Of a stretch of 64,000 nt of DNA, positions 7,916 through 51,772 are shown one piece after another. The DNA lies in IMG/VR virus record IMGVR_UViG_3300032242_002041, positions 1 through 64,000 of that record; one strand, 5' to 3'. The stretch's first letter is position 1. The number at the start of each line of letters is the position of its first letter. A program made the position numbers and the translations under genes. The notes beneath the pieces are model-generated. The model was not told the DNA's origin. It worked only from the letters and a program-made list of their open reading frames with translations, and did not search any database.

Positions 7916-7948
7916 TGGTATCAAAATTGAGTTTCAACTCAACGCTAG

Positions 7949-19269: not shown

Positions 19270-19905
19270 TTATCCGCCTAGAGTAACACCGCTACCAATG
19301 GTTACTCCTGAGATATTGAGATAGTATGGTGGATTAAGAGAAATTGCAACAGTTGATATTGCTCCACCGACCTGGGTAAGACCAGCAGTTCTTGCAGTTG
19401 ATATTCCTGCGGCAACCTGTAGTTCATCAACTATGAGTAATCCAGCACTAGCAGACCGGACTCCAGGAGTGTTTACTCGAACGGTAGTGGAAGCAGGTGC
19501 TGTCCATGTACCAGCAACGATTGGTGCACCGGCTGCATAAACACTTAGTACATAAGCATTGGCTGTGGGGGTTGTTAAAGTGTTGGTTGTTAATGTTGTT
19601 GAGTAGGACGCAACTGGCTGTAAAGAACTTACTCCCCTGTAGTCAATCATTACCGCTATAGTACTAGTGCCAGCGTTGGTTAGGGCTACACTTGATTCTG
19701 ATGCAGTGGCAGTTTTATAAAAAATAGTAGAAAATGTGCCACTACCTTGTGCAGAAAGTAAGGTCCATCCGGAGGGTGTGGTAGTTGTTGCAGTTCCTGT
19801 GGTAACAATTATCAAAGTATCACCTGCGGCATACCCAGCAGGTACAGCTACAGTTGGGTTTGCACCCGTTGCGACTGCGCCAACAGCAACAAATGAGACA
19901 GCCAT
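19270..19905 (-). CDS. Small beta-sandwich fibre tip/adhesin protein
   Basis: T/A/V/G-rich with TPSGWTL, and a C-terminal hexapeptide-like ISGVTIGSGVTLGG. Confidence 0.55.
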   Translation of the reverse strand: MAVSFVAVGAVATGANPTVAVPAGYAAGDTLIIVTTGTATTTTPSGWTLLSAQGSGTFSTIFYKTATASESSVALTNAGTSTIAVMIDYRGVSSLQPVASYSTTLTTNTLTTPTANAYVLSVYAAGAPIVAGTWTAPASTTVRVNTPGVRSASAGLLIVDELQVAAGISTARTAGLTQVGGAISTVAISLNPPYYLNISGVTIGSGVTLGG

Positions 19906-31300: not shown

Positions 31301-31650
31301 ATACTGGCTAATGCGTTACCAATAGTAGCGGCATTAACAGTAGCAGCCAATACTGTACCTGTGCCACTTACTGTACCTGTTCCATAGTTGACGTTGCCAC
31401 CTGTTACGTTGCCAGTCACACTTGCTGACGTACCAGTAATAACACCGCCTACTGTACTTGCCGCTGTTTGTGTACCAGTAACACTTGTACTTGTTCCTGT
31501 GATCACGCCACCAGCAACAGATGCGGCTGTTACTCCACCTGATACACTTGCACTGGCACCACTTACAGCACCTGTGACACTGGCACTTGATCCAGTGATA
31601 ACACCACCCACTGTACTAGCGGCAGTTACTGTGCCTGTTACTGATACGTT
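20700..31650 (-). repeat. Degenerate 63-bp (21-aa) coding repeats across three fibre genes
   Basis: TS(T/V/A)SVTG(S/T/G)(Q/V)TAAS(T/V)(V/A)GGVITG units interspersed with 11-aa SVTGAVSGASA half-units. Confidence 0.9.
22400..26833 (-). CDS. Giant repeat-rich fibre protein
   Basis: 1477 aa: MAFPTTP start, many 21-aa repeats and an IDGGTY end. Confidence 0.8.
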   Translation of the reverse strand: MAFPTTPTDGQTTVVNGITYVYSSASNSWTRQSTGFVTVSASGNITGGNVLTGGQVSATGNITTAGYFVGAFAGSISGNVTAPGANTQVVYNNAGNLAASSAFTYNSATNVLSVTGNVAGGNISTGGQLSAGLVASNLIPAANITYSLGNTTNRWKDLWLSNSTLYLGNVTVGATDTTLTVNGSNIVVTGSGNSISTSGNVIGGNVLSSGAISTSGTVTAASTVGGVITGSSVSVTGTSSAGSYSTAGGVTAASVAGGVITGTSTSVTGTQTAASTVGGVITGSSTSVTGAVSGASASVSGGVTAASVAGGVITGTSTSVTGGVTAASVAGGVITATSVSATGNITGSYLFGNGSQITGLPAGYSNTNAASFLAAFGSNTISTTGTINAGNITGGNLLTGGLISSTGNITGGNISATAHTGTTVSVTGTVTAASVVGGVITGTSTSVTGTQTAASTVGGVITGSSTSVTGSVQGASASVSGGVTAASVAGGVITGTSTSVTGTQTAASTVGGVITGTSTSVSGNVTGGNVLTGGLISSTGNLTSAANISGANILSTGAISTSGTATAASTVGGVITGTSVSVTGTATAASTVGGVITGSSTSVSGGVTAASVAGGVITGSSASVTGAVSGASASVTGGVTAASVAGGVITGSSTSVTGAVSSATVSASGNITGANVNTAQVYNATGLTITNGSGNINITPFGNLVLANTFVNGLQLTPVQDTDAASKYYVDQIASTGLTFHTPVYVATTTTLATTTGGTITYTQPNGVSNGVGAYLQTTGSFNLIDTANVQTVGTRILVKNEANGAYNGVYTWSNATAIVRSTDTNTYGSVPNTLSLNDYFFTSNGAVNGGTAFVVNAPQGTITFGTSNISFAVFSQTTTYTANTSAGISLTGTVFSAKVDNATTAFDGAGNIIVKAGATLTTPNIGAATGTSLSVTGTVTAASTVGGVITGTSTSVTGAVQGASASVSGGVTAASVAGGVITGTSTSVTGTQTAASTVGGVITGSSTSVTGAVSGASASVSGTVTAASTVGGVITGSSASVSGTVTAASTVGGVITGSSASVTGAVQGASASVSGGVTAASVAGGVITGSSTSVTGAVSGATVSASGNITGGNVNYGTGTVSGTGTVLAATINAATIGNALASIVGGTVSAATIGNTGAAHVGASVSVTGGITAASVAGGVITGTSTSVTGSQTAASTVGGVITGTSVSVTGAVSGASASVSGAVTAASTVGGIITGSSTSVTGSQTAASTVGGVITGSSVSVTGAVSGASASVSGAVTAASTVGGIITGSTVSATGNITASYYFGNGSQLTGVAATTATALTNGTTNLTTTLNGNANLTISGTSNVVVWATTGQYVTGLLSVTGNITGGNVSATAHTGTTVSVTGTVTSASVVGGVITGSSTSVTGSQTAASTVGGVITGSSTSVTGAVTGGSLATGGTVSATGNITGGNILGTGVYKGGVSVLNANDTIDGGTY

Positions 31651-32175
31651 TGTACCAGTGTGATTTGTTGCTGAAACGTTACCGGCAATGACGTTGCCAG
31701 TGACACTTAATAATCCGGTGATATATTCGCCTGTGGTGGCAAACACTGCTACGTTAGCAGTTCCGCCAACGCTGACAGCAACGTTGCCGCCAGATGTACC
31801 AATGTTGACATTGGATGTGCCGTTGGTGATATTGCTGGCGTTAAAGCTGACCACGTTGTTACTGATACTGGTAACACGACCTTTGGAGTCAACTGTTACA
31901 GTAGGAATACTTGTACTGTTACCATATGTTCCAGCAGTCACACCTGAGTTGGCCAAGGTAGTAGTGATTGCAGTTTGACCAGAACCAGTGACATCGCCGG
32001 TTAAACTAATAGTTTGATTTTGAGTAAGGTTAATGATAGCATCGCTACCATTATTGATCTTGGTAAACAAATTACCATCGTTTGTGTTGATAGCCAATTC
32101 GCCCAGAGCCAAACTACCTGTGGTTGGTACAGCATTTGCTATGGCATTGCGTTTTAATAAAATTTGATTACTCAT
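26836..32175 (-). CDS. Giant repeat-rich fibre protein with C-terminal intramolecular-chaperone-like domain
   Basis: 1779 aa: MSNQILLKR start, 21-aa repeats and a YADLAEMY...GRVP C-terminal domain. Confidence 0.8.
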   Translation of the reverse strand: MSNQILLKRNAIANAVPTTGSLALGELAINTNDGNLFTKINNGSDAIINLTQNQTISLTGDVTGSGQTAITTTLANSGVTAGTYGNSTSIPTVTVDSKGRVTSISNNVVSFNASNITNGTSNVNIGTSGGNVAVSVGGTANVAVFATTGEYITGLLSVTGNVIAGNVSATNHTGTNVSVTGTVTAASTVGGVITGSSASVTGAVSGASASVSGGVTAASVAGGVITGTSTSVTGTQTAASTVGGVITGTSASVTGNVTGGNVNYGTGTVSGTGTVLAATVNAATIGNALASIVGGTVSAATIGNTGTAHVGTSVSVTGTATAASTVGGVITGTSTSVTGSQTAASTVGGVITGTSTSVTGSQTAASTVGGVITGTSTSVTGTQTAASTVGGVITGSSTSVTGAVQGASASVSGGVTAASVAGGVITGTSTSVTGTQTAASTVGGVITGTSTSVSGAVTAASVAGGVITGTSTSVTGSQTAASTVGGVITGSSTSVTGAVSGASASVSGGVTAASVAGGVITGTSTSVTGSQTAASTVGGVITGSSTSVTGAVSGASASVSGGVTAASVAGGVITGSSTSVTGSQTAASTVGGVITGSSVSVTGAVSGASASVSGGVTAASVAGGVITGTSTSVTGGVTAASVAGGVITGTSVSVSANVTGGNINTGGQVSATGTATVGNLVVSNNANILGNLNVQGNVTFINSNVITVNDLYIELANNQTTYANINGAGLNVGPQGTPLTNWTYATVANAWTTNVGISATSTVTGGNLATAGTVSATGNVTGGNVLTGGIISSTGNITTAGYFVGAFAGSISGNVTAGGSNTQIQYNNSGNLAGSSAFTFTQTTNALSVGGTITGGNLATAGTISSTGNITGGNISATNHTGTNVSVTGTVTAASTVGGVITGTSTSVTGTQTAASTVGGVITGTSTSVTGSQTAASTVGGVITGSSASVTGAVQGASASVSGGVTAASVAGGVITGTSTSVTGTQTAASTVGGVITGTSTSVTGSQTAASTVGGVITGSSVSVTGAVSGASASVSGGVTAASVAGGVITGTSTSVTGSQTAASTVGGVITGTSTSVTGTQTAASTVGGVITGTSTSVTGSQTAASTVGGVITGTSTSVTGSQTAASTVGGVITGSSTSVTGAVSGATVSASGNVTGGNVLTGGIVSATGNITGGNIVLPGSGGSISGSGNITGGNILTGGIVSATGNITGNYILGNGASLTGVITSVANINLGNSNVTVTASGGNIAASVGGTSNVVVWATTGEYVTGVVSASGNVTGGNILSTGLISTSGNIVGGGVRSTSSGTAPASPTVGDFWYNTTTNVQYRYTFDGTSYYWIDDFGATVGSGGTFSAIVNGTSQANIGAGGGNLAISINGTPNVAVFANSGLQINGDLTVTGNATLTGNILGDRIQNGTTMIDIQTQNGNANITIGGTSNVAVFATTGLYIGGVVSATGAVTGASVVGGVITGTSVSVTGGVTASSVAGGVITGTSTSVTGSQTAASTVGGVITGSSASVTGAVSGASASVSGGVTAASVAGGVITGTSTSVTGGVTAASVAGGVITGSSASVTGAVTGASLVGTITTASQTNITSVGTLGSLSVSGNITGGNLSVSTGTITVGSIVNANANAVGNIGSATTYFNTVFAKATSALYADLAEMYTADEEYPPGTVVIFDGDAEVTQSTSDHDSRVAGIVSTNPSYVMNAGLEGTTTATVALTGRVPCQVQGPVTKGQILVSGTVPGTAMAIEAGRFQPGVVIGKSLETITDNSVQIIEVAVGRF

Positions 32176-32183: not shown

Positions 32184-33029
32184 CTAATATGATCCTGCAT
32201 CTACTACCTGGAAGTCGTTAATTATCTTATACCACGACGTCCACGTTCCACTATAAAGTGTTCTATCCCACTGGATTTTCGCATTATTCAATGTTACTGT
32301 TCCAGGGTAAAATGTTTGTGTTGTTGTTGCTCCACTTGTCAACACTACTAATAATCCTGTATACACTGTACTATCTACTGGGGCTCCGGTTACACCGCTC
32401 CACGAGGTACGATTTACATTGTATGTTCCCATATTTATCAAGCTATTCCAATTATCTGTGTCTGAGCCACGATCTATGGCCACATTAGGAGCGACAATGT
32501 TGCCGGTGACACTGAGCGTTCCTACTATTACTGTACCGGTCGAACTTACTGTTAATACATTGGCCACACCGGCGCTACTAATAGTCACATTGGCATTGCT
32601 GTTGACTACAACATTGCTAGAGCCGCTTGAAATTGAGTTTGCTGAATAGTTTTGTGTGAATACCAGGGCTGTAGACCCAATTAAGATTGGGTTATCGGTG
32701 ATCAATTTCCACTGAGTATCGGCATATATGGAACCCTCAGTGACCATGATGATCATGCCAGCTTCAATTTCGCCGTTGTCGTTGCCGTCACTTGTTCTAG
32801 CCCAGGTACCGTTGGAGCCTGTGCCCACTGTGGCTACATAGTAAAGGCCGTTTTGACTGGCTGTAGTTTGCCCTGTAACCAAAACTCTATCGTTTTGAAC
32901 AAGAGTTACACCGTCAACCACAGTTGGGGTGCCGCCTGCTAGTGTGACGTTGGTTACAGTAACTACACGAGTAGCTTGCTTGTAATCAAGGTTAAAAATC
33001 TGCGCGGCACGCGGTCTAGTTAAGGCCAT
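32184..33029 (-). CDS. Fibre-associated protein
   Basis: 281 aa. The DGVTL...DRVLV..Q....NGLY module is related to modules in the 1477- and 1620-aa fibres. Ends VDAGSY. Confidence 0.7.
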   Translation of the reverse strand: MALTRPRAAQIFNLDYKQATRVVTVTNVTLAGGTPTVVDGVTLVQNDRVLVTGQTTASQNGLYYVATVGTGSNGTWARTSDGNDNGEIEAGMIIMVTEGSIYADTQWKLITDNPILIGSTALVFTQNYSANSISSGSSNVVVNSNANVTISSAGVANVLTVSSTGTVIVGTLSVTGNIVAPNVAIDRGSDTDNWNSLINMGTYNVNRTSWSGVTGAPVDSTVYTGLLVVLTSGATTTQTFYPGTVTLNNAKIQWDRTLYSGTWTSWYKIINDFQVVDAGSY

Positions 33030-33108: not shown

Positions 33109-33780
33109 TTAAACCAGGTCAAACAAGATCATTTCTGATTCCGCAGGATTGAGTATTTCTATTTCTATTTCATTTTCAAAACTCAATCCGTCGCCTTCTA
33201 CTACCGGTTGATCGTTTATAGTAGCTGTACCTGTGACTACGTATAGATAATAGTGACGGCTAGGATCAATCCAGTAGGTAAAATCTTCGGTAAAAATGCC
33301 GGCTAACAAACGGGCATCTTGATGTATAGGCAGATACTCAGTTATGTTACAAAAACAGTTGAGTTTGTCCTCACGAGAGAACTGGTGCCAGACATGTGCA
33401 GGTTTGGTATCCAGCTTGTTGGGCTGTATCCATAACTGTAAGTAACGATTAGGAGTGTTGGCAGTATTACCTTCGGTATGGCTTATACCTGATCCACAAC
33501 TCATACGCTGAACAGCACCAGCAGGTACTTCTACATCATTACCAAGACTATCCACATGATGGCTGCTACCTTCTACAACATAGCCAAAGATTTCCATGTT
33601 CTTGTGTTCATGCCAAGGTACTTGCCAGGCATACTGAACACGGTCATCATTGATGGTTTGAAGGTCGCTATAGTTCATATAGCGACTGTCGTAATAACTA
33701 GGGAAACTAAACGTCCTGTAACTGTTTATAAAATCTGCTCTAGGATTTCCCCTAGTATTAGCAGGACGATGTAATATCAT
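33109..33780 (-). CDS. Pirin-family cupin (YhhW/quercetinase-like)
   Basis: TFSF..YYD, INDD, HEHKNMEI..YV.EG..HHVDSLGN and QRMS.GSGI.H.E motifs. Confidence 0.9.
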   Translation of the reverse strand: MILHRPANTRGNPRADFINSYRTFSFPSYYDSRYMNYSDLQTINDDRVQYAWQVPWHEHKNMEIFGYVVEGSSHHVDSLGNDVEVPAGAVQRMSCGSGISHTEGNTANTPNRYLQLWIQPNKLDTKPAHVWHQFSREDKLNCFCNITEYLPIHQDARLLAGIFTEDFTYWIDPSRHYYLYVVTGTATINDQPVVEGDGLSFENEIEIEILNPAESEMILFDLV

Positions 33781-34326
33781 TTAGCACCATTGATTTGTGT
33801 TAACGATATTTGGTGTAATTATTGTAAATGTAGCAGGTAAGTTCCAAGTTCCTGCTAATGTGTAAATAGGACCGTTGTAGTAACCAGTTCCAGAAGTTTG
33901 CCAGATAGGATTAGCGGTATCAACCACACCCATATCCAACCATGCGTTATTGTCGCCGGCGTCATACAAACGCATAACGACCACACCAGATGCAAGTGTG
34001 CTACCGGCTCCCCAGACCACATTGAACATATAAGCATCAGTGCTGGGATTCAATCCATTACTGGCCCAGTACGCACGAATCTCAGCAAGTTTGGCAGGAC
34101 TACCGCCGTTGTTTAAACTTAAACTAGGCTCCCAAAATGCTTCTCCTGGACCACTTTGTCCAGTAGTGGTAAATCCTATGTTACCGTTAGGGGATATATA
34201 GTTTCCACCATAGGAAATAGTAAAGTCTGTTGAACTTAGTGAAAATGATGCTCCACTGCTAACACCTATGCCCCAGCCAGGTCCTATGCTTACTCCGGGT
34301 CCTATTGATACGTTATATGCTACCAT
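33781..34326 (-). CDS. Small IGPG-tagged virion/adhesin paralogue
   Basis: SIGPGVSIGPGW N-terminus, WGAGS, PATFT and a C-terminal WC. Confidence 0.65.
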   Translation of the reverse strand: MVAYNVSIGPGVSIGPGWGIGVSSGASFSLSSTDFTISYGGNYISPNGNIGFTTTGQSGPGEAFWEPSLSLNNGGSPAKLAEIRAYWASNGLNPSTDAYMFNVVWGAGSTLASGVVVMRLYDAGDNNAWLDMGVVDTANPIWQTSGTGYYNGPIYTLAGTWNLPATFTIITPNIVNTNQWC

Positions 34327-34348
34327 GATTTGTTTTCCTTAATGTTGT

Positions 34349-34903
34349 TTAACACCAACCGCCCTTGTTAATGGCCGGAGTTACCAAAGTGAATGTTGCT
34401 GGGAACAAAAATGTGCCGGCAAGTTCTTGAGTAGTGTTGTTGTTGGGTGGATCAGTATTCCAGCCTGTGACTGTAGTGTCTACTGGAGCAATAAAAAGAT
34501 TGCCAGTAGAATTACTTGTTCCAGACATTATGACATATCCGTTAGTAATACTACTGCCGGCTCCCCAGGTAACTGACCATAAAGCAGCTTGATTGGCGCT
34601 TGTCAGCACGTTTGAGTTCTGTAAGTTAGTGAAGAAATCTGCAACAGGTTGACTGTTGATGTTTACATAGTAAGGACTAAATGCCGTGTAGTTAAAATTA
34701 GAGCTATCAGGAGGAATGTTGGAAAGATTTACAATAAATCCATCTACTCCGTTTGTGCCCACTGGTGTAGGATAGTCAACTGTGGCTGAATTATTGTAGG
34801 AATATCCTGTGGTAAAGTCAGATGACTGTAGCGTGATTGAATGTCCGCTACTAATACTAAATCCTGGTCCTATGCTGAATCCTGGTCCTATGCTGAATGA
34901 CAT
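34349..34903 (-). CDS. Small IGPG-tagged virion/adhesin paralogue
   Basis: SIGPGFSIGPGF N-terminus, WGAGS, FPATFT and a C-terminal WC. Confidence 0.65.
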   Translation of the reverse strand: MSFSIGPGFSIGPGFSISSGHSITLQSSDFTTGYSYNNSATVDYPTPVGTNGVDGFIVNLSNIPPDSSNFNYTAFSPYYVNINSQPVADFFTNLQNSNVLTSANQAALWSVTWGAGSSITNGYVIMSGTSNSTGNLFIAPVDTTVTGWNTDPPNNNTTQELAGTFLFPATFTLVTPAINKGGWC

Positions 34904-34913
34904 GTGTTATTCC

Positions 34914-35357
34914 TTAGCTAAATGTAACTGGGAATATGAACGTTGCTGGGAAACTGACCACATCATTCATAAAGAATACAATCACGCCAGGTTGTCCAGA
35001 TTGATCATTTTGTTGAAGATTGACTGTCATTGTAGTAGTTGTGCTTCCAGATGACCAGGTCACAGTTCGATTGCCTGTGCCGTAGGTACTAAAGAATGCT
35101 TGATTATTGGCAGTTAGATAACTGACAGCAACACCGTTTGAAGTACTTCCAGACCCACTGGTGGCGTTGAGAATAAATCCATTGCTGATCATTGTGGCTG
35201 TTTGGTCTTCTATCCATTGCTGACTGTTGCCACTCTGAGTCATCTCGGTGAAGCCAACGACTCCGTTACTGCCGCTAGGGCCAGCGCCGCCGCCTGTGCC
35301 TACTGTCCATCCAGGTCCTACTGTCCAGCCTGGTCCAAATGTTGTTGGTGCTACCAT
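34914..35357 (-). CDS. Small GPG-tagged virion/adhesin paralogue
   Basis: FGPGWTVGPGWTV N-terminus, WSSGS and FPVTFS. Confidence 0.6.
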   Translation of the reverse strand: MVAPTTFGPGWTVGPGWTVGTGGGAGPSGSNGVVGFTEMTQSGNSQQWIEDQTATMISNGFILNATSGSGSTSNGVAVSYLTANNQAFFSTYGTGNRTVTWSSGSTTTTMTVNLQQNDQSGQPGVIVFFMNDVVSFPATFIFPVTFS

Positions 35358-35413
35358 ACGTCGTTATCCTTTGTTAATGTTAGTACCGGGCTGTTACACC
35401 CGGCACTGTCTTT

Positions 35414-38400
35414 TTACTTTTGAATCTGCGCTTTTATTGCTTCGATATCTTGTCTTAACTCTTTGACTGTTTCAATCAAAAATGGTATTACCATTATATA
35501 GTTAACTGACTTGATACCTTCTGCATTTGTACTAACTGCTTCAGGAAGTATTTGTTCTACTGCCTGTGCAATCATACCGTATGCGTGACCAGATCCATCT
35601 TTCCAATCGTATCCAACACCTTGCAATCCATCAACTACTTGACCGGCATTGACTATTGGTGTAACATTGTCTTTGAGACTAGCATCACTGGTATTAACAA
35701 AGTTCTGTGCATATACATTTCCACTTACAACCAAGTTGCCTGTGGCAGCAATATTTGAACTTCCGTCTACAACACTGATTTCAGCAGTTCCAAGACCGTT
35801 ACTGATACTGTAAACAGTTGTAGTAGTGGTCAACACACGAACGTCAATCAAGTCGCCTACTGCAGGAGCTTCAGTAAATGTAAGTGTCACACCGCTGACA
35901 GCATAAGCTGTTGTTGGAATCTGTTGCACACCGTTGATACTGACAATTGTACCAGCTGTGGTAGCATTTCCACTCAATGTAAACACTACTGTAGTGCCAT
36001 CACCGTTGAACTGTTGATCAGTGATCAATGTATAACTTGGAGCACCTACTTGAGTCCACATGTTGTTGTCATACACTTCTAAATAATTAGTAGTTGTATT
36101 AAAACGGAACTGACCAGTTGAACCCACAGGACGCTGTGCGCTGTTACCAACCGGAACTTTGATACTGTTGGTTGCGTTAAACGACACAATTGAATTGATT
36201 GTTTGTGTAGCATTTCCAAAACTAGCTGTGCCTGTACCTGCGTCAACAAAGAACGTAATATTACCTGTACTGTCGTAGATACCAGTATTGGTATTCAACT
36301 GACTGTAGTTTAAGAACAAGTTGGCCGCTGGGCTATCAATACCACCTGATGTTGTAACCAAGAAATTGCCTTCAACATTGCCTGTAGCACTGAGGTTGCC
36401 AGCTGTGGTGTCACCCGGTATATTTACTGTAGAGGTTGTGTTACCTAAAGTCAGTGTGGCGCTGGTAGTATTAGCACCTATCTGAATCAAGTTAGGATAT
36501 TGATCTCCAATAGAAATTTTGCCGCCGCCTGGGTTGGCAACTCCTATACTAAGGAAAGTACTGTTTGTCCAAATTTGACTAGAATTTAGACGAATATTTT
36601 CAGCTGTTACATTACCTGTGGTACTGACATTACCGTTAATGTTAATGCCAGTGTCGTAGAATGTAGCAACAACGTTTGAACTAGTGCCAATAGCAACAAC
36701 TACGTTACCATTTGGAGTAATAACATTGGCGTAGCTTCCACCATTGGTAATTTTAGTTGAGCTTACATTGGCGGCATTAATGTTACTGATATAGTAGCCA
36801 TCACCAAACAAATAATTGGCTGTTATAATATTACCAGTTGCTGATACATAGCCACCAGTTAAAATGTTACCACCAGTTACGTTACCACCAGCTGAAATAT
36901 TTCCGGCTCCTGTGATATTTCCGTTAGAGCCACTGGTTTTTAAGTTGCCGCCGGTGACATCACCTGTGGCACTTACATAACCACCTGTGGCAATGTTGCC
37001 GCCAGTTACTGTACCTGTTGCACTAACCGCACCTGCTGTGTTTACGTTGCCGGCTGTTACAGTGCCTATAGCACTTACATAGCCACTTGCGGTTACGTTG
37101 GCCAAATTGGCTATGCCACTGACACTAACTCCGTTCAGGATGCCAACGCTTGTCAGACTTGAGTTGACTACGTTGTTGGCAATGAATGTGCCTGTTAAGG
37201 TTTCAGCGTTGGCTGAACTGGCTGTAACACCTGTTAACTGGCTACCATTACCAATGATATAATTACCAGTGACGTTGCCTGTAGCACTTACATAGCCGCC
37301 TGTGGCCACATTACCTACTGTGGCTGTACCTGTGGCACTTACGACTCCTGTGGTCAATAAATTACCACCGTGAACATCGCTTGTGGCCGACACTTGACCG
37401 GCTGTGATTAAATTACCACCAGTTACGTCGCCTGTGGCTGTTACAAAACCAGTAGTAGAAACATTTGCACCATAAATTGTATCACCCGATGTAACTGATC
37501 CAGTTGCACTTACTAAGCCGCTGGTTAGAACATTGCCGCCTGTAATGTTGCCTGTACCAGAAATTGTTCCACCAGTAGACAAATTACCACCTGTTACTGT
37601 ACCGGTAGCACTTACTGTACCACCTGTGGCTAAATTACCTACTGTGGCTGTGCCGGTGGCACTTACTGTACCGCCTGTGGCCAAGTTGCCACCTGTTACT
37701 GTACTGGTTACACTTAGGCTTGTACCTGTTGCAGCACCAATGTTAGGTGTTGTTAAATTAGCACCAGCTTTGACAATAATGTTACCTAAGCCGTCAAAGG
37801 CTGTAGTGTTGTTGTCAACTTTGGCACTGAATACTGTGCCAGTTAAGCTGATACCAGCTGCTGTGTTGGCTGTGTATGCTGTAACTTGGCTGAATACTGC
37901 AAACGTAATATCACTTGTACCAAAAGTAATTGTTCCTGTTGGCGCATTAACAACAAACGCAGTACCTGCATTAACGTTACCATTGGTTGTAAAGAAGTAG
38001 TCGTTCAAACTTAGAGTATTTGGTTGTGTACCATATGTATCAGTGTCTAGGGTACGAACAATTGTTGTAGCATTGGCCCAACCGTACACACCGTTCCAGG
38101 CAGCATTGGCTTCGTTCTTGATCAGGATACGTGTGCCAACTGTTTGAACATTGGCTGTGTCAATTAAATCAAACGAGCCTGTGGTTTGCAAATATGCACC
38201 AACACCGTTACTTACACCATTGGGTTGAGCATAGCTAACTGTACCACCTGTGGCTGTGTCCAACGTTGTTGAGGTAGCCGCATAAACTGGTGTGTGGAAG
38301 GTTAATCCTGTTGATGCAAGATTGTCAACATATAGTTTATTGGCCGCATCTTGATCTTGCGCTGGATAGGCTACACCGTTGATATAGGTGTTGGCCAGTA

Positions 38401-40276
38401 CAACATTACCAAAGGTGCCAAGATTAATATTTCCTGTACCTGCGGACAAGGTCAATGCAGTTGCACCATATACTTGTGCGGTGTTTACATTGGCACCTGT
38501 AATATTGCCTGTGGCACTTACTGTACCACCAGTGTTGATGTTGCCACCGTTTACATTGCCACTTGCAGTTACCAAACCGCTGGTGTTGATATTGCCACCA
38601 GTGATGTTGCCAGCACCAGACAATTCGCCACCTGATCCGCTGGTATAAATGTTGCCGCCAGTGATTGAACCTGTGGCACTTACAGCACCACCTGTGTATA
38701 AATTAGCACCAGTAATGTCCCCGCTAGCACTTGCATAACCATTAGCGTTTACATTAGCACCTGTGATATCTCCACTAGCTGAAACAGTACCACCTGTGGC
38801 CAAATTGCCACCAGTTACTGTACCAGAAGCTGTTACAATACCGATTGTGTTTACGTTGCCACCGGTTACGTCGCCTGTGGCACTTACATAGCCACTAGTA
38901 TTGATGTTACCACCTGTTTGGGTAACTTCTCCGTTGACACTAAGGCTAGTTAGTACTCCAACTGTTTGTAGGCTTGAATTGATTACGGTAGAATTAAGGA
39001 ATGTGCCTGTTAAGGTTTCAGCATTGGCTGAGTCAGCTGTGACGCCTGAGATGTAACGTCCATTACCAACAAAGTAGTTAGAAGTTGCAATATTACCTGT
39101 GGCAGTTACAACTCCGCCAGTTACAAGGTTAGCACCGGTTACTTCGCCTGTGGCAGTTATCAAACCACCTGTTATGATGTTGCCGCCAATGATGTTGCCA
39201 GAACCACTGATGTCTCCGCCTGATCCGCTGGTATAAAGGTTACCACCTGTGATCGAACCAGTGGCACTTACAGCACCACCTGTGTATAAATTAGCACCGG
39301 TTACATCACCTGACGCACTTGCATAGCCGCCTGTGACCAAGTTGCCACCAGTTACTGTACCAGAGGCTGTTACCACACCAGTTGTGTTTACGTTACCACC
39401 AGTTACGTCGCCTGTGGCACTTACATATCCGCCAGTGGCAATGTTGCCACCTGTTACTGTACCGGTAGCACTTACTTGACCACCTGTGGCCAAATTACCA
39501 GAGGTTGTGTTGCCGCTTACAGATAAGTTGGACAATACGCCAACTGTTTGTAGACTTGAATTAATTACATTGTTGGCAAGGAATGTTCCGGTTAGTGTTT
39601 CAGCATTGGCTGAATCGGCTGTGACGCCTGTAATATTGCGACCATTACCGAAGAAATAATTGGCTGTTGTAATATTGCCAGTGGCACTAACATAACCGGC
39701 TGTTAGAATGTTGCCGCCTGTGATGTTGCCGCCTGCACTGGCTGTTCCAGCAGTGGCCAAGTTACCACCTGTGACGGTGCCTGTGACATTGGCATCACTG
39801 ATGATGTTTCCACCCAAACTGGTTGTGCCTGAAATTTTAACATTGCCACCAATGGTAGCATTGGCTGTGTGGATATTGGCATAGCCTGTGACTGTGATTA
39901 CAGTGTTGGATTCAGCTGTGCTGGTAAAGGCTGTGACAAATTCTTTGGTACTTTCTTGCCATACAAAGGCAATATTTTCGCTAGTACCACGTTGTCCAAT
40001 AAAACCAATGTCCACTGCTGGAGTACCAGTTTGCATACTGGCCAATAAAATAACCGGATCTTCAATTGTGGTAATTGTAGTATCAATTGCTGTGGTATTG
40101 CCTTGAACTGTCAAGTTACCTGTAACTGTCAAGTCTGAACCATAGGTCAGATTGTTGGCAATTTTTGTACTTGTAATTGAGTAGTTTTGTAGTTTGGTAT
40201 TTGCATTAATACCAAGATACACGTTACCTGCTACTGCATCGGTTATTTGATTATTATTAATTCTTGTGACAGCCAT
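35414..40276 (-). CDS. Giant fibre protein with C-terminal peptidase S74-type chaperone domain
   Basis: 1620 aa with SATG.VTGGN repeats and a C-terminal SDASLKDNV...YDWKD...GMIAQ...VNY..VIPFLIETVKEL domain. Confidence 0.85.
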   Translation of the reverse strand: MAVTRINNNQITDAVAGNVYLGINANTKLQNYSITSTKIANNLTYGSDLTVTGNLTVQGNTTAIDTTITTIEDPVILLASMQTGTPAVDIGFIGQRGTSENIAFVWQESTKEFVTAFTSTAESNTVITVTGYANIHTANATIGGNVKISGTTSLGGNIISDANVTGTVTGGNLATAGTASAGGNITGGNILTAGYVSATGNITTANYFFGNGRNITGVTADSANAETLTGTFLANNVINSSLQTVGVLSNLSVSGNTTSGNLATGGQVSATGTVTGGNIATGGYVSATGDVTGGNVNTTGVVTASGTVTGGNLVTGGYASASGDVTGANLYTGGAVSATGSITGGNLYTSGSGGDISGSGNIIGGNIITGGLITATGEVTGANLVTGGVVTATGNIATSNYFVGNGRYISGVTADSANAETLTGTFLNSTVINSSLQTVGVLTSLSVNGEVTQTGGNINTSGYVSATGDVTGGNVNTIGIVTASGTVTGGNLATGGTVSASGDITGANVNANGYASASGDITGANLYTGGAVSATGSITGGNIYTSGSGGELSGAGNITGGNINTSGLVTASGNVNGGNINTGGTVSATGNITGANVNTAQVYGATALTLSAGTGNINLGTFGNVVLANTYINGVAYPAQDQDAANKLYVDNLASTGLTFHTPVYAATSTTLDTATGGTVSYAQPNGVSNGVGAYLQTTGSFDLIDTANVQTVGTRILIKNEANAAWNGVYGWANATTIVRTLDTDTYGTQPNTLSLNDYFFTTNGNVNAGTAFVVNAPTGTITFGTSDITFAVFSQVTAYTANTAAGISLTGTVFSAKVDNNTTAFDGLGNIIVKAGANLTTPNIGAATGTSLSVTSTVTGGNLATGGTVSATGTATVGNLATGGTVSATGTVTGGNLSTGGTISGTGNITGGNVLTSGLVSATGSVTSGDTIYGANVSTTGFVTATGDVTGGNLITAGQVSATSDVHGGNLLTTGVVSATGTATVGNVATGGYVSATGNVTGNYIIGNGSQLTGVTASSANAETLTGTFIANNVVNSSLTSVGILNGVSVSGIANLANVTASGYVSAIGTVTAGNVNTAGAVSATGTVTGGNIATGGYVSATGDVTGGNLKTSGSNGNITGAGNISAGGNVTGGNILTGGYVSATGNIITANYLFGDGYYISNINAANVSSTKITNGGSYANVITPNGNVVVAIGTSSNVVATFYDTGININGNVSTTGNVTAENIRLNSSQIWTNSTFLSIGVANPGGGKISIGDQYPNLIQIGANTTSATLTLGNTTSTVNIPGDTTAGNLSATGNVEGNFLVTTSGGIDSPAANLFLNYSQLNTNTGIYDSTGNITFFVDAGTGTASFGNATQTINSIVSFNATNSIKVPVGNSAQRPVGSTGQFRFNTTTNYLEVYDNNMWTQVGAPSYTLITDQQFNGDGTTVVFTLSGNATTAGTIVSINGVQQIPTTAYAVSGVTLTFTEAPAVGDLIDVRVLTTTTTVYSISNGLGTAEISVVDGSSNIAATGNLVVSGNVYAQNFVNTSDASLKDNVTPIVNAGQVVDGLQGVGYDWKDGSGHAYGMIAQAVEQILPEAVSTNAEGIKSVNYIMVIPFLIETVKELRQDIEAIKAQIQK

Positions 40277-40481: not shown

Positions 40482-41444
40482 TTAGGATGTGTAATTCTGA
40501 ACCTGTGCCAAGGTAAGATCACCTGTGGTGTTGGTCCAAGTTGGGATGTCTGCGCCAGATTTAGCAGTGGTTGAAACAGCTTCACTGAATGTTAATCCAC
40601 GTGTGTTACCAGCAGCAGTCACAATGTTTGCACCACCTTCGGTAGCAGCCAACTGGAAAGTTGTTGTACCGTTGGTACCAATAACAAAATATGTTGTTGG
40701 GTTGGTGTAACCGGTGATTGTGGCATTGCCTGTAAGTGCGCCGGCTACAGTGATAACTTGACCTGTTGTAAAGGTTGTGGCATTGGCAGTGAACCAACCA
40801 GCAGTGTTAGCAACAGCCACACTACCAAGAGTGATTGCGGTTGTTTCGCCAGAAACAAAGAAGTTAACAGCGTAACGATTTGGAGGTGTTGATGAATCCC
40901 AAATGTACTTGTTGGTCAAACGACTAGCAAAAGTTTGGCCACCGTTGGCACTGAATACCATGTTCATTTGACCAGACGTGATTGTGGCGTTTGCAACCAA
41001 TTGGCATTGACCACAGTCACTGGCAGTGCCTGAACCTGCACCAGCACCGGTTGCTGTGAAAACGTCACCAACTGTTGGGTTGATTCCAGCACCAATTGAG
41101 GTCCAGTTTGTGTTGCCCAAGCTGAGAATTTGATAGCTAAAGCCCGGAGTGAAACTTCCTGCGTTTACACTATTTTCACCAGATACTAGATATTTGTAAG
41201 TGCCTTTTTGTGTAATAATGTGAGCAGCACCTTGTTGGCCGTTTACGTTGGCAGTGATTTTGACCACTGGAAAAGTGCTTGTAGCAATGCCTGTATTGGC
41301 ACCACCAACCACGCCCAAGAATTCAGTGCTGGTCATTCCAACCGGAATAACTTGCGTACCTGGATCCAAGTTGGCAAACTGTGGATAACCAGCATCTGTT
41401 GGAATGCTGTTGTTTAATTTTTGTATTTTAAGTGGACGACCCAT
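40482..41444 (-). CDS. Putative abundant virion structural/decoration protein
   Basis: 320 aa, beta-rich, MGRPLKI start. Has a strong AAGGAG RBS, a late promoter and its own terminator. Confidence 0.6.
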   Translation of the reverse strand: MGRPLKIQKLNNSIPTDAGYPQFANLDPGTQVIPVGMTSTEFLGVVGGANTGIATSTFPVVKITANVNGQQGAAHIITQKGTYKYLVSGENSVNAGSFTPGFSYQILSLGNTNWTSIGAGINPTVGDVFTATGAGAGSGTASDCGQCQLVANATITSGQMNMVFSANGGQTFASRLTNKYIWDSSTPPNRYAVNFFVSGETTAITLGSVAVANTAGWFTANATTFTTGQVITVAGALTGNATITGYTNPTTYFVIGTNGTTTFQLAATEGGANIVTAAGNTRGLTFSEAVSTTAKSGADIPTWTNTTGDLTLAQVQNYTS

Positions 41445-42808: not shown

Positions 42809-44146
42809 TCAACTGGTCAAGGTGTAGAACGGACTGAGACCTGTTTCTACACAACTACCATTGTTGGTAATGGTGTAGGCATTAGGACTTGCATCAACAG
42901 TGGCACTGGTTGTGCTTTGTGCTGTTAATAGCTGTGTACCGGAGATGGCTGTGAGCGGTACTGTTGGTACTGTATAAGTAGATCCAGGATAAAGTGCTCT
43001 ATTAAGAACTCGTAAATTTGAAATATAACCAGTCATGTAAGCTGCATTTATTTGACCTATTGACACAGTTGTTCCTGTTACATTAGGTGCTGTTGGTGTG
43101 TCGGATGCTTTTACTACGCCATTGACAAATATTTTTCTAGTAGTTCCGTCGTATTGTGCTACAACGTGATACCATGTATTTGCTACTAGGCCTATATCTC
43201 CAGTGCTCAAATCGTTAAACCACCAATAGTTGATTAGTCCTGTTCCGTTTTCAATTCTAAAAGCGTTTAGCTGACTATTGGTCTGAGTTCCCCAGTTGAT
43301 AATCTCGGCTCTTGTTCCTTGGTTGTAAACCCAGGCCTCTATGGTGTAACTAGAACTTCCTGTTGGCAATGCTGGAGCACTAGCAGAAAGATAAGAATTG
43401 CTGAACTTTGTTGAGCCGCCGATGAATGGGTTGCTGGTCACAGGCACAGAGCTACCTGTATTGGTAATGGTGTAGGCATTAGTACTTGCATCGGTAATTG
43501 TGGTGGCGCTTTGACAGGTCAATAGCTGTGTACCAGAAATGGCGGTGAGTGGTGTGGTTGGAGGTGTAAAGTTGCTGGTATAAACTGCGGTGCCTTTGAC
43601 AATGCGTAAATTACTCACATTGCCGGCAAAATATGTATTGAGAAATGCGCCAATTGACAAGGGAGTTCCTGCTGATGATTGTGGTGAACCACTTATTGCT
43701 ACCGTTCCTTGTGAGACGCCGTTTACAAATAAAGTAATTCCGCCAGTGGACTTGGTCATGGCAATGTGTGTCCAAGTATTCAATGCCACAGTCGCAGTAG
43801 AATTTACAGATTGAGATGAACCATTATAATAATAAAAAGCTATTCTTCCTGTGTTGGAATTGATACCAAATGCCCAATATTGAGTAGAGGTAGCAGGATC
43901 CATATTGCCAACTAAAACAGGAGAAGGAGTGCTACTCCAGAAATTATATGCGGTTGGATATATCCAAGCTTCAATGGTGTAATCAGTGGTATACCAATCA
44001 AAATTTGCAGTTGAATATGGCACGGTCAAATATTGACTGGATCCGTTGAGCGCTACTGAACCGGTCAAGGTTGTGGCAGGTGCACCAGATCCTGATACGG
44101 TAAATCCAGGTCCTATGGTAAATCCGGGTCCAATTGTTAATGGCAT
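42809..44146 (-). CDS. Tandem LamG/concanavalin-like lectin domain protein with IGPG tag
   Basis: Two YTIEAW...W.H.A...G.ISNLR domains after an MPLTIGPGFTIGPGFTV N-terminus. Confidence 0.8.
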   Translation of the reverse strand: MPLTIGPGFTIGPGFTVSGSGAPATTLTGSVALNGSSQYLTVPYSTANFDWYTTDYTIEAWIYPTAYNFWSSTPSPVLVGNMDPATSTQYWAFGINSNTGRIAFYYYNGSSQSVNSTATVALNTWTHIAMTKSTGGITLFVNGVSQGTVAISGSPQSSAGTPLSIGAFLNTYFAGNVSNLRIVKGTAVYTSNFTPPTTPLTAISGTQLLTCQSATTITDASTNAYTITNTGSSVPVTSNPFIGGSTKFSNSYLSASAPALPTGSSSYTIEAWVYNQGTRAEIINWGTQTNSQLNAFRIENGTGLINYWWFNDLSTGDIGLVANTWYHVVAQYDGTTRKIFVNGVVKASDTPTAPNVTGTTVSIGQINAAYMTGYISNLRVLNRALYPGSTYTVPTVPLTAISGTQLLTAQSTTSATVDASPNAYTITNNGSCVETGLSPFYTLTS

Positions 44147-44189
44147 CGTGTGATTCCTTTTGAGATTATGTATTTATTTAGTGGCCAAC

Positions 44190-44359: not shown

Positions 44360-44713
44360 TTAGTGCAAGTGCTTTACTACAGGAACTGCTGGTTCTTCTA
44401 TTTCTTCGGGTTTTGTAATTGCCATTTCGTTTTCGCAATCTTCACAGATTTTGTCGTCGGCTTTAGAGTGATCAAACACTTCGTCTAGCAAGTTTTCGGT
44501 GCTCCAACCTGAGCTGGATAATACATGAATACAATCAATAAACAAGCTAAACACCGCGGCTGTATAATCAAACTTTTCAGTACGGCCTTCTTTGCTCCAA
44601 AGCAATGCCATAGCATCTTCTGCAGCTTCGTTGCACACGTCCATGTTGAACACGTAGGTTGAGCCGTCGGCTAGGGTTTCAACAATGTCTTCGTTCTTTT
44701 CTACTTTACTCAT
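44360..44713 (-). CDS. Hypothetical acidic protein with CxxC
   Basis: 117-aa ORF with an AGGAG RBS inside the 3' end of the upstream endonuclease gene. Confidence 0.6.
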   Translation of the reverse strand: MSKVEKNEDIVETLADGSTYVFNMDVCNEAAEDAMALLWSKEGRTEKFDYTAAVFSLFIDCIHVLSSSGWSTENLLDEVFDHSKADDKICEDCENEMAITKPEEIEEPAVPVVKHLH

Positions 44714-45566: not shown

Positions 45567-45630
45567 AGTATTATTTAGCATAGTCTGTCGCATTACTAAA
45601 ATATTAACATCTTTAGAATTAAAAGTCAAC

Positions 45631-45654
45631 AAAAAAGGCACTCGAAAGTGCCTT
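45631..45654 (-). terminator. Major capsid gene terminator with UUCG loop
   Basis: AAGGCACT-TTCG-AGTGCCTT-TTTT on the minus strand. Confidence 0.88.
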
Positions 45655-51729: not shown

Positions 51730-51735
51730 TATTTA
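51730..51735 (-). promoter_or_regulatory. Late promoter TAAATA (portal)
   Basis: CATAAATA 7 nt before the ATG. Confidence 0.7.
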
Positions 51736-51772
51736 TGGAGCTGTTAGATTGCGCAGACTAATTTACGCAGAT

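What the first reader, a model, noticed from the sequence alone, without database searches (positions are those of the whole stretch)
33781..35357. Family of small variable proteins sharing an IGPG hexapeptide tag (swappable adhesin cassette)
Seen: three tandem paralogues start with 2-3 copies of a hexapeptide [IVF]GPG[FWV][ST]. They share W(G/S)xGS and PxTF motifs, two end in WC, and their central regions are highly diverged. The same tag starts the unrelated double-LamG protein (42809-44146), and a variant (ISGVTIGSGVTLGG) ends the 19270 protein. Known: [LIV]-G-x4 hexapeptides form left-handed beta-helix turns. Inference: the tag is a universal connector that lets different receptor-binding heads plug into a common virion site, giving mixed host or surface recognition.
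Basis: partly seen in the sequence, partly recalled or inferred. Interest (0 to 1): 0.6.

Follow-up and report, generated by a model that had tools for sequence, protein, structure and literature searches.

The report
Hexapeptide-tagged swappable phage adhesin heads
A lake-water giant phage encodes several small, unrelated lectin-like "head" proteins that all start with the same ~18-residue glycine-rich hexapeptide repeat. Comparison with related phages shows this repeat is a movable N-terminal adaptor of the kind phages use to attach interchangeable receptor-binding proteins, though attachment to the virus particle is not yet shown.

Summary
Three minus-strand genes begin with 2-3 hexads of h-x-h-G-x-G: A (35357-34914), B (34903-34349) and C (34326-33781). 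So does the double-LamG gene (44146-42809). In the whole 228-kb record the relaxed motif occurs only at these four N-termini and at the C-terminus of the 211-aa protein; shuffles give 0.3.

The window belongs to an uncultured freshwater jumbo T4-like phage (capsid 61-65% identical to PA5oct, CBB and Vibrio 2.275.O, which lack the tag). In its clade the tag heads at least six cargo families, encoded at two hot spots of the structural module. A pattern scan found 51 N-terminally tagged ORFs in 47 viral contigs.

The same cargos occur elsewhere behind a different ~115-aa N-domain. The B/C domain also forms the extreme C-terminal tip of 700-1200-aa proteins. So the tag is a separable adaptor and the cargos are swappable heads.

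Docking to the virion is inferred, not shown.

Unexpected: the B/C domain (no Pfam family, no known fold, ends in Trp-Cys) is followed by a conserved 223-aa YhhW-type pirin in 16 of 16 contexts.

Verdict: new variant of a known kind; interest 0.6.

The parts
34914..35357 (-). Gene A, 147 aa: hexad tag plus a truncated relative of the B/C head domain (ends FPATFIFPVTFS, no WC tail)
   Evidence: homologues L018 140 aa, L051 135 aa and L054 139 aa, all tagged and ending YNYPFTFS or similar
35292..35342 (-). Tag of A (residues 6-22: TFGPGW TVGPGW TVGTG)
34349..34903 (-). Gene B, 184 aa: hexad tag plus 'WC' head domain (beta-rich, one helix; ends KGGWC)
   Evidence: no Pfam or PHROG family; no known fold
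34844..34897 (-). Tag of B (residues 3-20: FSIGPG FSIGPG FSISSG)
   Evidence: pLDDT below 50 in the monomer model
33781..34326 (-). Gene C, 181 aa: hexad tag plus 'WC' head domain of another subfamily (ends TNQWC). Its stop codon abuts the pirin start codon
   Evidence: 59% identity to the C-terminal tip of the 984-aa protein L108:6001-8955
34264..34311 (-). Tag of C (residues 6-21: VSIGPG VSIGPG WGIG)
   Evidence: Pfam Hexapep below threshold (E 0.014)
33109..33780 (-). 223-aa YhhW-type pirin (bicupin), the invariable downstream partner of WC-domain genes
   Evidence: Pfam Pirin 4.5e-23 and Pirin_C_2 1e-15; E 7e-39 to E. coli YhhW (1tq5/6uts), with the H-x-H and H-x-E motifs that line up with the same motifs in YhhW kept; synteny
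42809..44146 (-). 445-aa tagged protein with two Laminin_G_3 (concanavalin-like) domains, at hot spot 1 downstream of the capsid gene
   Evidence: LamG part 34-38% identical to LamG domains inside giant cyanophage virion or baseplate proteins
44084..44140 (-). Tag of the LamG protein (residues 3-21: LTIGPG FTIGPG FTVSGSG)
44171..44177 (-). ATAAATA late-promoter-like heptamer, 31 nt upstream of the LamG gene
   Evidence: 18 of 28 genomic copies lie within 80 nt upstream of a start codon (about 4% expected), including portal and sheath
35414..40276 (-). 1620-aa repeat-rich fibre with a C-terminal Peptidase_S74 intramolecular chaperone, directly upstream of A (hot spot 2). Candidate shaft for the tagged heads
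35386..35404 (-). GC-rich hairpin between the fibre gene and A (approximate coordinates)
   Evidence: read from the sequence
19273..19320 (-). C-terminal hexad-like peptide (LNISG VTIGSG VTLGG) of the 211-aa protein. Lineage-specific and of doubtful relevance
32184..33029 (-). 281-aa protein whose N-domain marks the downstream border of hot spot 2 in related contigs
40482..41444 (-). 320-aa clade-specific protein, conserved next to hot spot 1. Candidate docking partner by co-occurrence only
   Evidence: no homologue in 50,697 phage records
41594..42739 (+). TPR + GT-B (GT9-like) glycosyltransferase on the opposite strand, conserved beside hot spot 1

Best explanation
A, B, C and the double-LamG protein are late, free-standing adhesin or receptor-binding 'heads' of an uncultured freshwater jumbo T4-like phage.

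Each consists of a carbohydrate-binding-type or fibre-tip-type beta domain preceded only by a ~18-20-residue adaptor. The adaptor is M-x(2-8) followed by 2-3 hexads of h-x-h-G-(P/G/A)-G, that is, three-residue beta strands joined by tight Gly turns.

The adaptor is specific to this clade. It takes the place that a ~115-aa N-domain, or a whole ~1000-aa shaft, occupies in other phages. It most likely fixes the heads non-covalently to a shared site on the virion by adding short beta rungs to an oligomeric (probably trimeric) partner. I favour the fibre network over the capsid, about 60:40.

Because the adaptor is constant and the cargo is not, heads can be exchanged by recombination at two hot spots, which changes what the particle binds.

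Shown: the motif, its modular distribution, the gene positions, the promoter-like element and the strain-level variability.
Inferred: virion location, the docking mechanism, oligomeric state and role in host recognition.
For: (1) The tag sits only at extreme N-termini. There are four in this genome. There are 51 tagged ORFs in 47 IMG/VR loci, with the ATG 3-4 codons upstream in 39 of them. 52 of 58 members of the WC family alignment carry it, with consensus I-x-I-G-(G/P/A)-G x2.7.

(2) At least six cargo families sit behind the tag: the WC domain, the A-type domain, single LamG (~240 aa), double or longer LamG (445-696 aa), a 109-aa family and others.

(3) Reciprocal shuffling. The WC cargo and the single-LamG cargo each also occur behind a ~115-aa 'SRPFAYN' N-domain in other phages. 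The homology starts right after the tag or after that domain.

(4) The WC domain is always at the extreme C-terminus. 130 of 146 hits end in WC, in proteins of 160-1196 aa. That is the position of a fibre-tip receptor-binding domain. C is 59% identical to the tip of a 984-aa protein.

(5) Tagged genes lie at two hot spots of the structural module: capsid gene - homing endonuclease - [tagged genes] - TPR-GT - 320-aa gene - fibres, and giant fibre - [tagged genes] - 281-aa-type gene - fibre.

(6) The LamG gene has a late-promoter-like ATAAATA, as do the portal and sheath genes. Its LamG part matches LamG domains inside cyanophage virion proteins.

(7) The tag is conserved at protein level with synonymous differences.

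(8) Gene B is missing from contigs of related samples that hold C, the pirin gene and the fibre gene.

(9) Precedent: short conserved N-terminal peptides (7-11 aa and longer) dock secondary receptor-binding proteins in K1-5/SP6, KP32/KP34, Menlow and phiK64-1-type phages (PMC6872550; tested experimentally in PMC13352976). RaK2, a T4-like jumbo phage, assembles nine fibre proteins through conserved N-terminal domains (PMC10253068).
Against: There is no virion proteomics, no structure and no cultured member, so particle association is inferred from gene position and analogy.

The AlphaFold2 monomer model gives the tag no structure (pLDDT below 50).

No docking partner is identified, and no T4 gp10-like branching domain was looked for successfully.

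In PA5oct, the small genes at the equivalent place after the capsid gene carry no ESI-MS/MS virion note in the record. They are not homologous to the genes here.

The head domain has no known fold (best VIA Z 4.9; Foldseek E above 0.1), so 'receptor-binding' rests on its position in proteins, not on a fold match.

The strict link to an enzyme-like pirin is not explained by a pure adhesin model.
Confidence: 0.55

Rival explanations
1. The tag is mainly a self-association element. Three chains each contribute three hexads to a short triangular beta-helix or prism 'neck', which makes the small heads trimeric knobs. Attachment to the virion, if any, uses another surface, or there is none.
For: The hexad pattern (aliphatic, G, x, G, hydrophobic, x) resembles [LIV]-G-x4 beta-helix repeats, with a sub-threshold Hexapep hit. 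Three hexads equal one coil, which is unstable alone but plausible in an oligomer. The tag is disordered in the monomer model. There are weak fold echoes of trimeric adenovirus fibre heads (Z 4.0, 2.9, 2.7).
Against: The fold echoes are within noise. The tag replaces whole anchor domains and shafts in homologues, which points to attachment rather than only oligomerisation. This reading does not exclude docking. Oligomerisation was not tested.
Confidence: 0.2
2. The common site is the capsid. The tagged proteins would be Hoc-like head decoration proteins that bind capsomers through the tag and display lectin-like domains for adherence to surfaces or host envelopes.
For: Hot spot 1 lies directly downstream of the major capsid gene. 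LamG and other beta-sandwich domains are common capsid decorations (general knowledge). The N-domain of the neighbouring 281-aa protein is annotated 'head decoration' in several phage records.
Against: Hot spot 2 lies between fibre genes. The WC cargo caps long proteins of 700-1200 aa elsewhere. The LamG cargo matches baseplate or virion giants of cyanophages. No Ig-like or Hoc family match was found.
Confidence: 0.2
3. The proteins are not virion parts. The tag would be a recognition peptide for something else, for example a substrate or handle for the neighbouring TPR-glycosyltransferase, or a localisation signal, with the WC protein and pirin forming an intracellular or released enzyme system.
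For: A TPR + GT-B gene is conserved beside hot spot 1. The window's tags carry Ser or Thr at the sixth hexad position. The pirin keeps the conserved H-x-H and H-x-E motifs seen in YhhW and is 64-81% identical across phages, like an enzyme. In the PA5oct record the small genes at the equivalent place carry no ESI-MS/MS virion note.
Against: The sixth position is not conserved as Ser or Thr in relatives, where E, Q, D, N and K are common. The tag has no signal-peptide features. Cargo identity and position argue for particle proteins. The genes share strand and context with structural genes.
Confidence: 0.12
4. Chance low-complexity similarity or annotation artefact.
For: 43 of 94 pattern matches in viral contigs are Gly/Pro-rich frames, collagen-like runs or internal acyltransferase-type hexapeptide repeats.
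Against: Shuffles give 0.3 against 6 observed. The other 51 matches all sit 2-9 codons after an ATG in ORFs of at least 90 aa. The tag is conserved across a family defined by its cargo. Ribosome-binding sites are present.
Confidence: 0.01

Closest known systems
Conserved N-terminal docking peptides of secondary receptor-binding proteins in branched RBP systems (K1-5/K1E/SP6 hepta- and undecapeptides; KP32, KP34, Menlow, phiK64-1 groups; G7C gp63.1). Sources: PMC6872550, PMC13352976
   Same: A short N-terminal sequence is constant within a phage group and followed directly by variable, horizontally exchanged binding domains. Several such proteins occur per genome. The genes interrupt a syntenic structural module.
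   Different: Here the peptide is a periodic hexad repeat (h-x-h-G-x-G, 2-3 copies), not a unique sequence. The cargos are small lectin-like or tip domains (109-445 aa) rather than beta-helical depolymerases. No anchor protein with a T4 gp10-like branching domain has been identified. Nothing has been tested experimentally.
Branched fibre networks of T4-like jumbo phages (RaK2/phiK64-1, PMC10253068) and CBA120 tailspikes
   Same: A jumbo myovirus with many fibre genes, in which several binding proteins are assembled through conserved N-terminal modules.
   Different: Those modules are folded domains of about 100 aa (CBA120 D1, XD and AD types). The nearest cultured jumbo relatives of this window (PA5oct, Vibrio 2.275.O) have no hexad tag.
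Hexapeptide-repeat left-handed beta-helix (Pfam PF00132, acyltransferases)
   Same: Period of six, with an aliphatic residue followed by Gly. Such proteins are usually trimeric.
   Different: There are only 2-3 hexads (one coil). The i+4 position holds bulky residues (F/W/I) instead of small ones. The score is below the Pfam threshold, and the monomer model predicts no helix.
Tail-fibre tip plus downstream partner gene (T4 gp37/gp38, T2 gp38 adhesin, Tfa chaperones of Mu/P2/lambda). From general knowledge
   Same: A conserved gene lies immediately downstream of the gene that encodes the distal receptor-binding domain. This matches WC domain followed by pirin in 16 of 16 contexts.
   Different: The partner here is a YhhW-type bicupin that keeps the conserved H-x-H and H-x-E motifs. 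It is far more conserved than the tip domain and shows no co-variation with it (r = -0.01). No bicupin is known to me in that role.
T4 Hoc and other capsid decoration proteins
   Same: Dispensable-looking, surface-display-type beta domains encoded near head genes.
   Different: No Ig-like domains and no Hoc family match. The attachment element is N-terminal and repetitive. Half of the genes lie between fibre genes.

Membership tests
Conserved-peptide secondary RBPs of branched receptor-binding complexes | Short N-terminal sequence conserved among otherwise unrelated RBPs of one phage group | tested here: met
Conserved-peptide secondary RBPs of branched receptor-binding complexes | A primary anchor RBP or adapter with a T4 gp10-like branching domain that receives the peptide | tested here: inconclusive
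   Pfam and PHROG scans of the neighbouring large proteins name only fibre, S74, FapA-like and LamG features. No gp10-like hit appeared, but no sensitive profile or fold search of these 800-1800-aa proteins was done.
Conserved-peptide secondary RBPs of branched receptor-binding complexes | Cargo is a receptor-binding or depolymerase domain | tested here: inconclusive
   The LamG cargo is a lectin-type fold. The WC cargo always sits at the C-terminal tip of proteins but has no known fold. No depolymerase beta-helix was found.
Conserved-peptide secondary RBPs of branched receptor-binding complexes | Physical presence in the virion and tag-dependent incorporation | not testable with these tools
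   Uncultured phage.
Hexapeptide-repeat left-handed beta-helix (PF00132) | Score at or above the Pfam gathering threshold | tested here: not met
   C only: 15.5 bits against 27, E 0.014. A and B gave no hit.
Hexapeptide-repeat left-handed beta-helix (PF00132) | Several consecutive coils (at least about 5-6 hexads) folding as a beta-helix | tested here: not met
   2-3 hexads only. pLDDT below 50 and no strands in the monomer model. Oligomer not tested.
Laminin_G_3 / concanavalin-like lectin (445-aa protein) | Pfam match above threshold | tested here: met
   E 2.3e-39, 135 bits, two stretches
Pirin, YhhW-type quercetinase-like bicupin (33109-33780) | Pirin N- and C-terminal cupin domains above threshold | tested here: met
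   PF02678 81.8 bits and PF17954 58.1 bits; E 7e-39 to 1tq5/6uts over the full length
Pirin, YhhW-type quercetinase-like bicupin (33109-33780) | Metal ligands (3 His + 1 Glu) conserved | tested here: met
   The H-x-H and H-x-E motifs line up with the same motifs in E. coli YhhW and are kept in all 9 phage copies compared. That these four residues are the metal ligands is from my own knowledge of pirins, not from a tool result.
Pirin, YhhW-type quercetinase-like bicupin (33109-33780) | Dioxygenase activity | not testable with these tools
   Needs an enzyme assay.
T4 Hoc-type head decoration | Ig-like domains and a Hoc family match | tested here: not met
   No Pfam or PHROG match for A, B or C.

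The most novel reading that the evidence does not exclude
Two linked novelties.

(a) The hexad tag may be a minimal 'beta-rung' plug: 18 residues that complete or extend an oligomeric beta-helix on the virion. That would let one freshwater jumbo-phage clade display a changing set of free-standing heads that other phages carry covalently at the ends of 1000-aa fibres.

(b) The WC head may be a new fibre-tip domain that works only together with a conserved YhhW-type pirin encoded immediately downstream. The pirin could be an assembly factor, a distal subunit held through the invariant C-terminal Trp-Cys (for example Cys ligating the cupin metal), or an enzyme acting at the host surface. Any of these would be the first bicupin component of a phage adsorption apparatus.
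Probability: 0.25. Interest if true: 0.8.

Novelty: new variant of a known kind. Interest (0 to 1): 0.6.

Why it matters
If the tag is a docking plug, it is the shortest periodic adaptor yet seen for phage receptor-binding modules. It would give a simple rule (M-x2-8-(hxhGxG)2-3) for finding adhesin cargo in uncultured freshwater jumbo phages, whose hosts and receptors are unknown. It would also be a candidate handle for display or host-range studies once a cultured member exists.

The comparative data also define a previously unnamed C-terminal 'WC' tip domain. It has 186 representative clusters among 1.84 billion proteins, no Pfam family and no fold match. Its gene is strictly linked to a very abundant phage pirin (more than 1150 clusters at 90% identity). 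That raises a directly testable question: what does a metal-dependent bicupin do at a phage fibre tip?

Tried and rejected
- Pfam and PHROG scans of A, B and C gave nothing, apart from a sub-threshold Hexapep hit.
- megablast and tblastn of the region, B and C against 50,697 phage records found no match.
- Fold searches with the B model (pLDDT 81.6) found no convincing fold. PDB Foldseek gave E above 0.1. VIA against 48,161 chains gave a best Z of 4.9, to the riboflavin-kinase barrel, which is within noise. BFVD returned only one uncharacterised phage protein.
- The ESM Atlas gave scores of 0.81 or less, so no lead.
There is therefore no verdict on oligomerisation, docking or WC-pirin binding.
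- The AlphaFold2 model of the alternative 'SRPFAYN' N-domain protein was too poor to search (pLDDT 65.5).
- The T4 late promoter TATAAATA is not enriched (1 match against 2.8 expected). The shorter ATAAATA is enriched.
- The tag was sought in the nearest cultured relatives (Vibrio phage 2.275.O, PA5oct) and is absent.
- The idea that the C-terminal hexads of the 211-aa protein are a conserved counterpart of the tag is rejected as unsupported, because only 2 of the 16 aligned family members have them.
- The idea that Ser/Thr of the tag is a conserved glycosylation site is unlikely, because that position varies.
- Literature searches found no description of this tag or of a phage pirin at fibre genes.
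- No genetic code other than table 11 was needed.
Full report
**What is in the window**

The reported interval holds exactly three minus-strand ORFs: A (35357-34914, 147 aa), B (34903-34349, 184 aa) and C (34326-33781, 181 aa). Each is preceded by an AAGGA-type ribosome-binding site.

Upstream lies a 1620-aa repeat-rich fibre gene with a C-terminal Peptidase_S74 chaperone domain. Downstream, abutting C's stop codon, lies a 223-aa pirin gene.

All three proteins start with 2-3 hexads best written h-x-h-G-(P/G/A)-G. B has FSIGPG FSIGPG FSISSG. So does the 445-aa double Laminin_G_3 protein at 44146-42809.

B and C are homologous (41% identity, E 1.7e-12). A is a truncated relative that lacks the last ~12 residues, including the terminal Trp-Cys (hhalign 99.4%).

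**Is it more than chance?**

I searched the 236 ORFs (72,246 residues) of the 228-kb record that contains the window. A relaxed motif (hxhGxGhxhG) occurs only at these four N-termini and in the last 11 residues of the 211-aa protein at 19905-19270. Residue shuffles give 0.3 matches.

Identical tag residues in the four genes are often encoded by different codons. The peptide is therefore maintained by selection and not by recent gene conversion.

It is shared by only 2 of the 16 aligned family members; the other 14 end in a hydrophobic ...FFLMF-type peptide. I give it little weight.

**What genome is this?**

The record is an IMG/VR virus contig, 66% complete by CheckV. One of its proteins also lies on a 345-kb contig.

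It has a T4-type portal, prohead protease, capsid protein and a 1188-aa sheath. Its capsid protein is 61-65% identical to those of the jumbo phages Vibrio 2.275.O, PA5oct, Sinorhizobium Phosso and Pectobacterium CBB.

Reads and contigs that share parts of the region come from freshwater and lake metagenomes. Neither the Vibrio phage nor PA5oct contains the tag.

**The tag is a separable module**

B recovered 72 metagenomic homologues. In the 58-sequence alignment built from them together with A, B and C, 52 carry 2-3 hexads at residues ~3-20. The consensus is I-x-I-G-(G/P/A)-G, 2.7 times.

A DNA pattern for IGPGxxIGPG matched 94 reading frames in viral contigs.
- 51 are ORFs of at least 90 aa in 47 loci. 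In these the motif starts 2-9 codons after an ATG, and 3-4 codons after it in 39.
- The other 43 are Gly/Pro-rich frames, collagen-like runs or ordinary internal hexapeptide-repeat enzymes.

At least six cargo families sit behind the tag:
- the WC domain;
- the A-type domain (135-147 aa);
- single LamG (~240 aa, the commonest);
- double or longer LamG (445-696 aa, three in tandem in L023);
- a 109-aa family;
- several others.

**Reciprocal shuffling**

In phages of other groups (L009, L011, P0030, P0037, P0073) the WC domain follows a ~115-aa N-terminal domain that begins M-x-x-SRPFAYN. In L009 the same N-domain heads two LamG proteins, one of them 51% identical over its LamG part to an ORF of L042 that begins MIISGG (no clear hexad tag) and 41% identical to a hexad-tagged LamG protein of L086. 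In every case the homology begins right after the tag or right after that domain.

A profile search of 1.84 billion representative proteins found 186 members of the WC family. The domain is always at the extreme C-terminus, and 130 of 146 end in WC. The carriers range from 160 to 1196 aa.

C is 59% identical to the tip of a 984-aa protein of another phage, but only about 41% identical to its neighbour B. So B and C are separately acquired heads and not a recent tandem duplication.

The same head can therefore be covalently attached to a long protein, or be free-standing behind 18 residues of tag.

**Where the genes lie**

In contigs whose capsid protein is 85-99% identical to the window's, tagged genes occupy two places.
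- Hot spot 1: capsid gene - homing endonuclease - tagged gene(s) - TPR-glycosyltransferase (opposite strand) - 320-aa gene - fibres.
- Hot spot 2: giant fibre - tagged gene(s) - a protein with the 281-aa-type N-domain - fibre - 221-aa gene.

The window has the LamG gene at the first and A-B-C-pirin at the second.

The heptamer ATAAATA occurs 28 times in the genome. 18 of these lie within 80 nt upstream of a start codon, where about 4% would be expected. One lies 31 nt upstream of the LamG gene, and others precede the portal and sheath genes.

The LamG part is 34-38% identical to LamG domains embedded in giant cyanophage virion and baseplate proteins.

In contigs of related samples, the pirin 5' part, gene C and the fibre gene are represented. 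Gene B has essentially no coverage, and A is near-identical in only one run. This is contig-level evidence, so gaps prove little.

**Structure**

The AlphaFold2 model of B, built from the 58-sequence alignment, is good for the head (mean pLDDT 81.6, pTM 0.79). The head is beta-rich with one helix. The tag is disordered (residues 5-17 below 50).

No solved structure matches it. Foldseek gave E above 0.1. VIA gave a best Z of 4.9, with small adenovirus fibre heads at Z 2.7-4.0, all within noise. The only BFVD match is an uncharacterised phage protein.

Pfam's Hexapep model reaches 15.5 bits on C against a threshold of 27. The left-handed beta-helix idea is therefore neither confirmed nor excluded. 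Three hexads would make a single coil, which could only be stable in an oligomer or stacked on a partner.

**Most likely mechanism**

The tagged proteins are late, free-standing adhesin or receptor-binding heads. The tag is a clade-specific adaptor that takes the place of an anchor domain or shaft. It fixes the heads to a common site of the particle, probably by beta-strand (rung) addition in an oligomer.

I favour the fibre network. Hot spot 2 lies between fibre genes, the WC domain is a tip domain elsewhere, and the LamG cargo has baseplate relatives. A capsid site is a serious alternative, because hot spot 1 follows the capsid gene.

The modularity is shown. Docking, oligomeric state and any effect on host range are inferred. 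The closest precedent is the conserved N-terminal peptide that docks secondary receptor-binding proteins in K1-5/SP6-, KP32-, KP34-, Menlow- and phiK64-1-type phages (PMC6872550, tested in PMC13352976), along with the N-terminal assembly domains of RaK2 fibres (PMC10253068).

The differences are the periodic hexad nature of the tag, the small lectin-like cargos and the absence so far of an identified socket.

**An unexpected finding outside the question**

Every WC-domain gene examined is followed by a 223-aa pirin, usually within 0-15 nt. This holds for the window, L003-L011, L106 and L108. It also holds when sampling starts from the pirin (L110, L111 and two contigs without DNA). That makes 16 of 16 contexts, spanning T4-like and unrelated phages and carriers from 165 to 1196 aa. 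In one context (L007) two tagged genes lie between the WC gene and the pirin gene.

The pirin is a YhhW-type bicupin (E 7e-39 to 1tq5/6uts) that keeps the H-x-H and H-x-E motifs lining up with YhhW's; I take these to be the metal ligands from prior knowledge of pirins. It is 64-81% identical across all contexts and very abundant, with more than 1150 clusters.

The WC domains are only 24-75% identical, and their divergence does not track that of the pirin (r = -0.01).

The arrangement recalls a fibre-tip gene followed by its chaperone or adhesin (T4 gp37/gp38; my own knowledge). I know of no bicupin in that role. Its function here is open.

**Verdict**

The 'swappable cassette with a common connector' reading is partly supported: the modular and cassette parts are well supported, and the connector mechanism is untested. 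'Universal' and 'left-handed beta-helix' are not supported as stated.

This is a new variant of a known kind of system, with an additional unexplained gene pair that deserves experiments.

Noticed in passing
window 33109-34326 (pirin + gene C); L003:10001-11200; L004:10001-11197; L009:7779-9133; L010:7449-9111; L011:7506-8997; L106:6001-10264; L108:6001-9638; L110:4429-5672; L111:4470-5672: A strict two-gene unit. A protein ending in the 'WC' domain (165-1196 aa, any N-terminal architecture) is followed within 0-15 nt by a conserved 223-aa YhhW-type pirin that keeps the H-x-H and H-x-E motifs. This holds in 16 of 16 contexts across unrelated phages. In L007 two tagged genes lie in between.
   Followed up: partly
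window 44171-44177, 51730-51736, 11543-11549, 7910-7916 (minus strand) and elsewhere in the 228-kb record: The heptamer ATAAATA is strongly concentrated within 80 nt upstream of start codons (18 of 28 copies, about 4% expected). It looks like this phage's late-promoter core. The full T4 octamer TATAAATA is not enriched.
   Followed up: partly
window 41594-42739 (+): A TPR + GT-B (GT9-like) glycosyltransferase on the opposite strand is conserved next to hot spot 1 in related contigs (L040, L049, L054, L078; L003 has GT17 + TPR as two genes). It could glycosylate virion proteins. Not tested.
   Followed up: no
window 44706-45641 (-): A homing endonuclease gene (phrog_314) lies directly downstream of the major capsid gene, at the border of hot spot 1. 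PA5oct and the related contigs also have an endonuclease-size gene there. It may drive cassette turnover.
   Followed up: no
L009:11977-13599, L009:14144-15154 (minus), L011:7506-8315; P0030, P0037, P0073: A second adaptor-like N-terminal module (~115 aa, begins M-x-x-SRPFAYN-x-G-x-P-I-x-GT) heads both WC and LamG cargos in another phage group. Its AlphaFold2 model was too poor (pLDDT 65.5) to classify.
   Followed up: partly
window 19270-19905 (-) and alignment A3: The family of the 211-aa protein mostly ends in a conserved hydrophobic C-terminal peptide (...S-N-F-F-L-M-F). In this phage and one close relative that peptide is replaced by hexad-like VTIGSG VTLGG. The family has no Pfam or PHROG match.
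   Followed up: partly
window 34464-34857 compared with 33479-34266: In three related metagenome runs, gene B has almost no contig coverage. The pirin 5' end and gene C are covered by many 85-95%-identical contigs at high summed depth. This suggests strain-level presence/absence of single heads and a very abundant pirin/C-type unit.
   Followed up: partly
L023:4789-12848: Three tandem tagged LamG paralogues (679, about 670 and 696 aa). The first two are each followed by a ~310-aa ORF ending VGSGSITF, and the third by a 182-aa ORF cut by the end of the locus. They lie directly after the capsid gene of a 331-kb contig. This is a larger version of the same cassette array.
   Followed up: no
window 19905-32175 and 35414-40276 (-): Four giant fibre genes (830, 1477, 1779 and 1620 aa). 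Two end in a shared ~100-aa domain (...IEVxVGR-x; phrog_22593/19602). One ends in a Peptidase_S74 chaperone. Internal TGGN/SATG repeats produce many assembly joints in metagenome contigs.
   Followed up: no
L004:13287-17674; L106:10296-11375: Related contigs carry unusual auxiliary genes near the cassette: carbonic anhydrases (Carb_anhydrase, LCIB_C_CA), DnaJ and ClpB.
   Followed up: no
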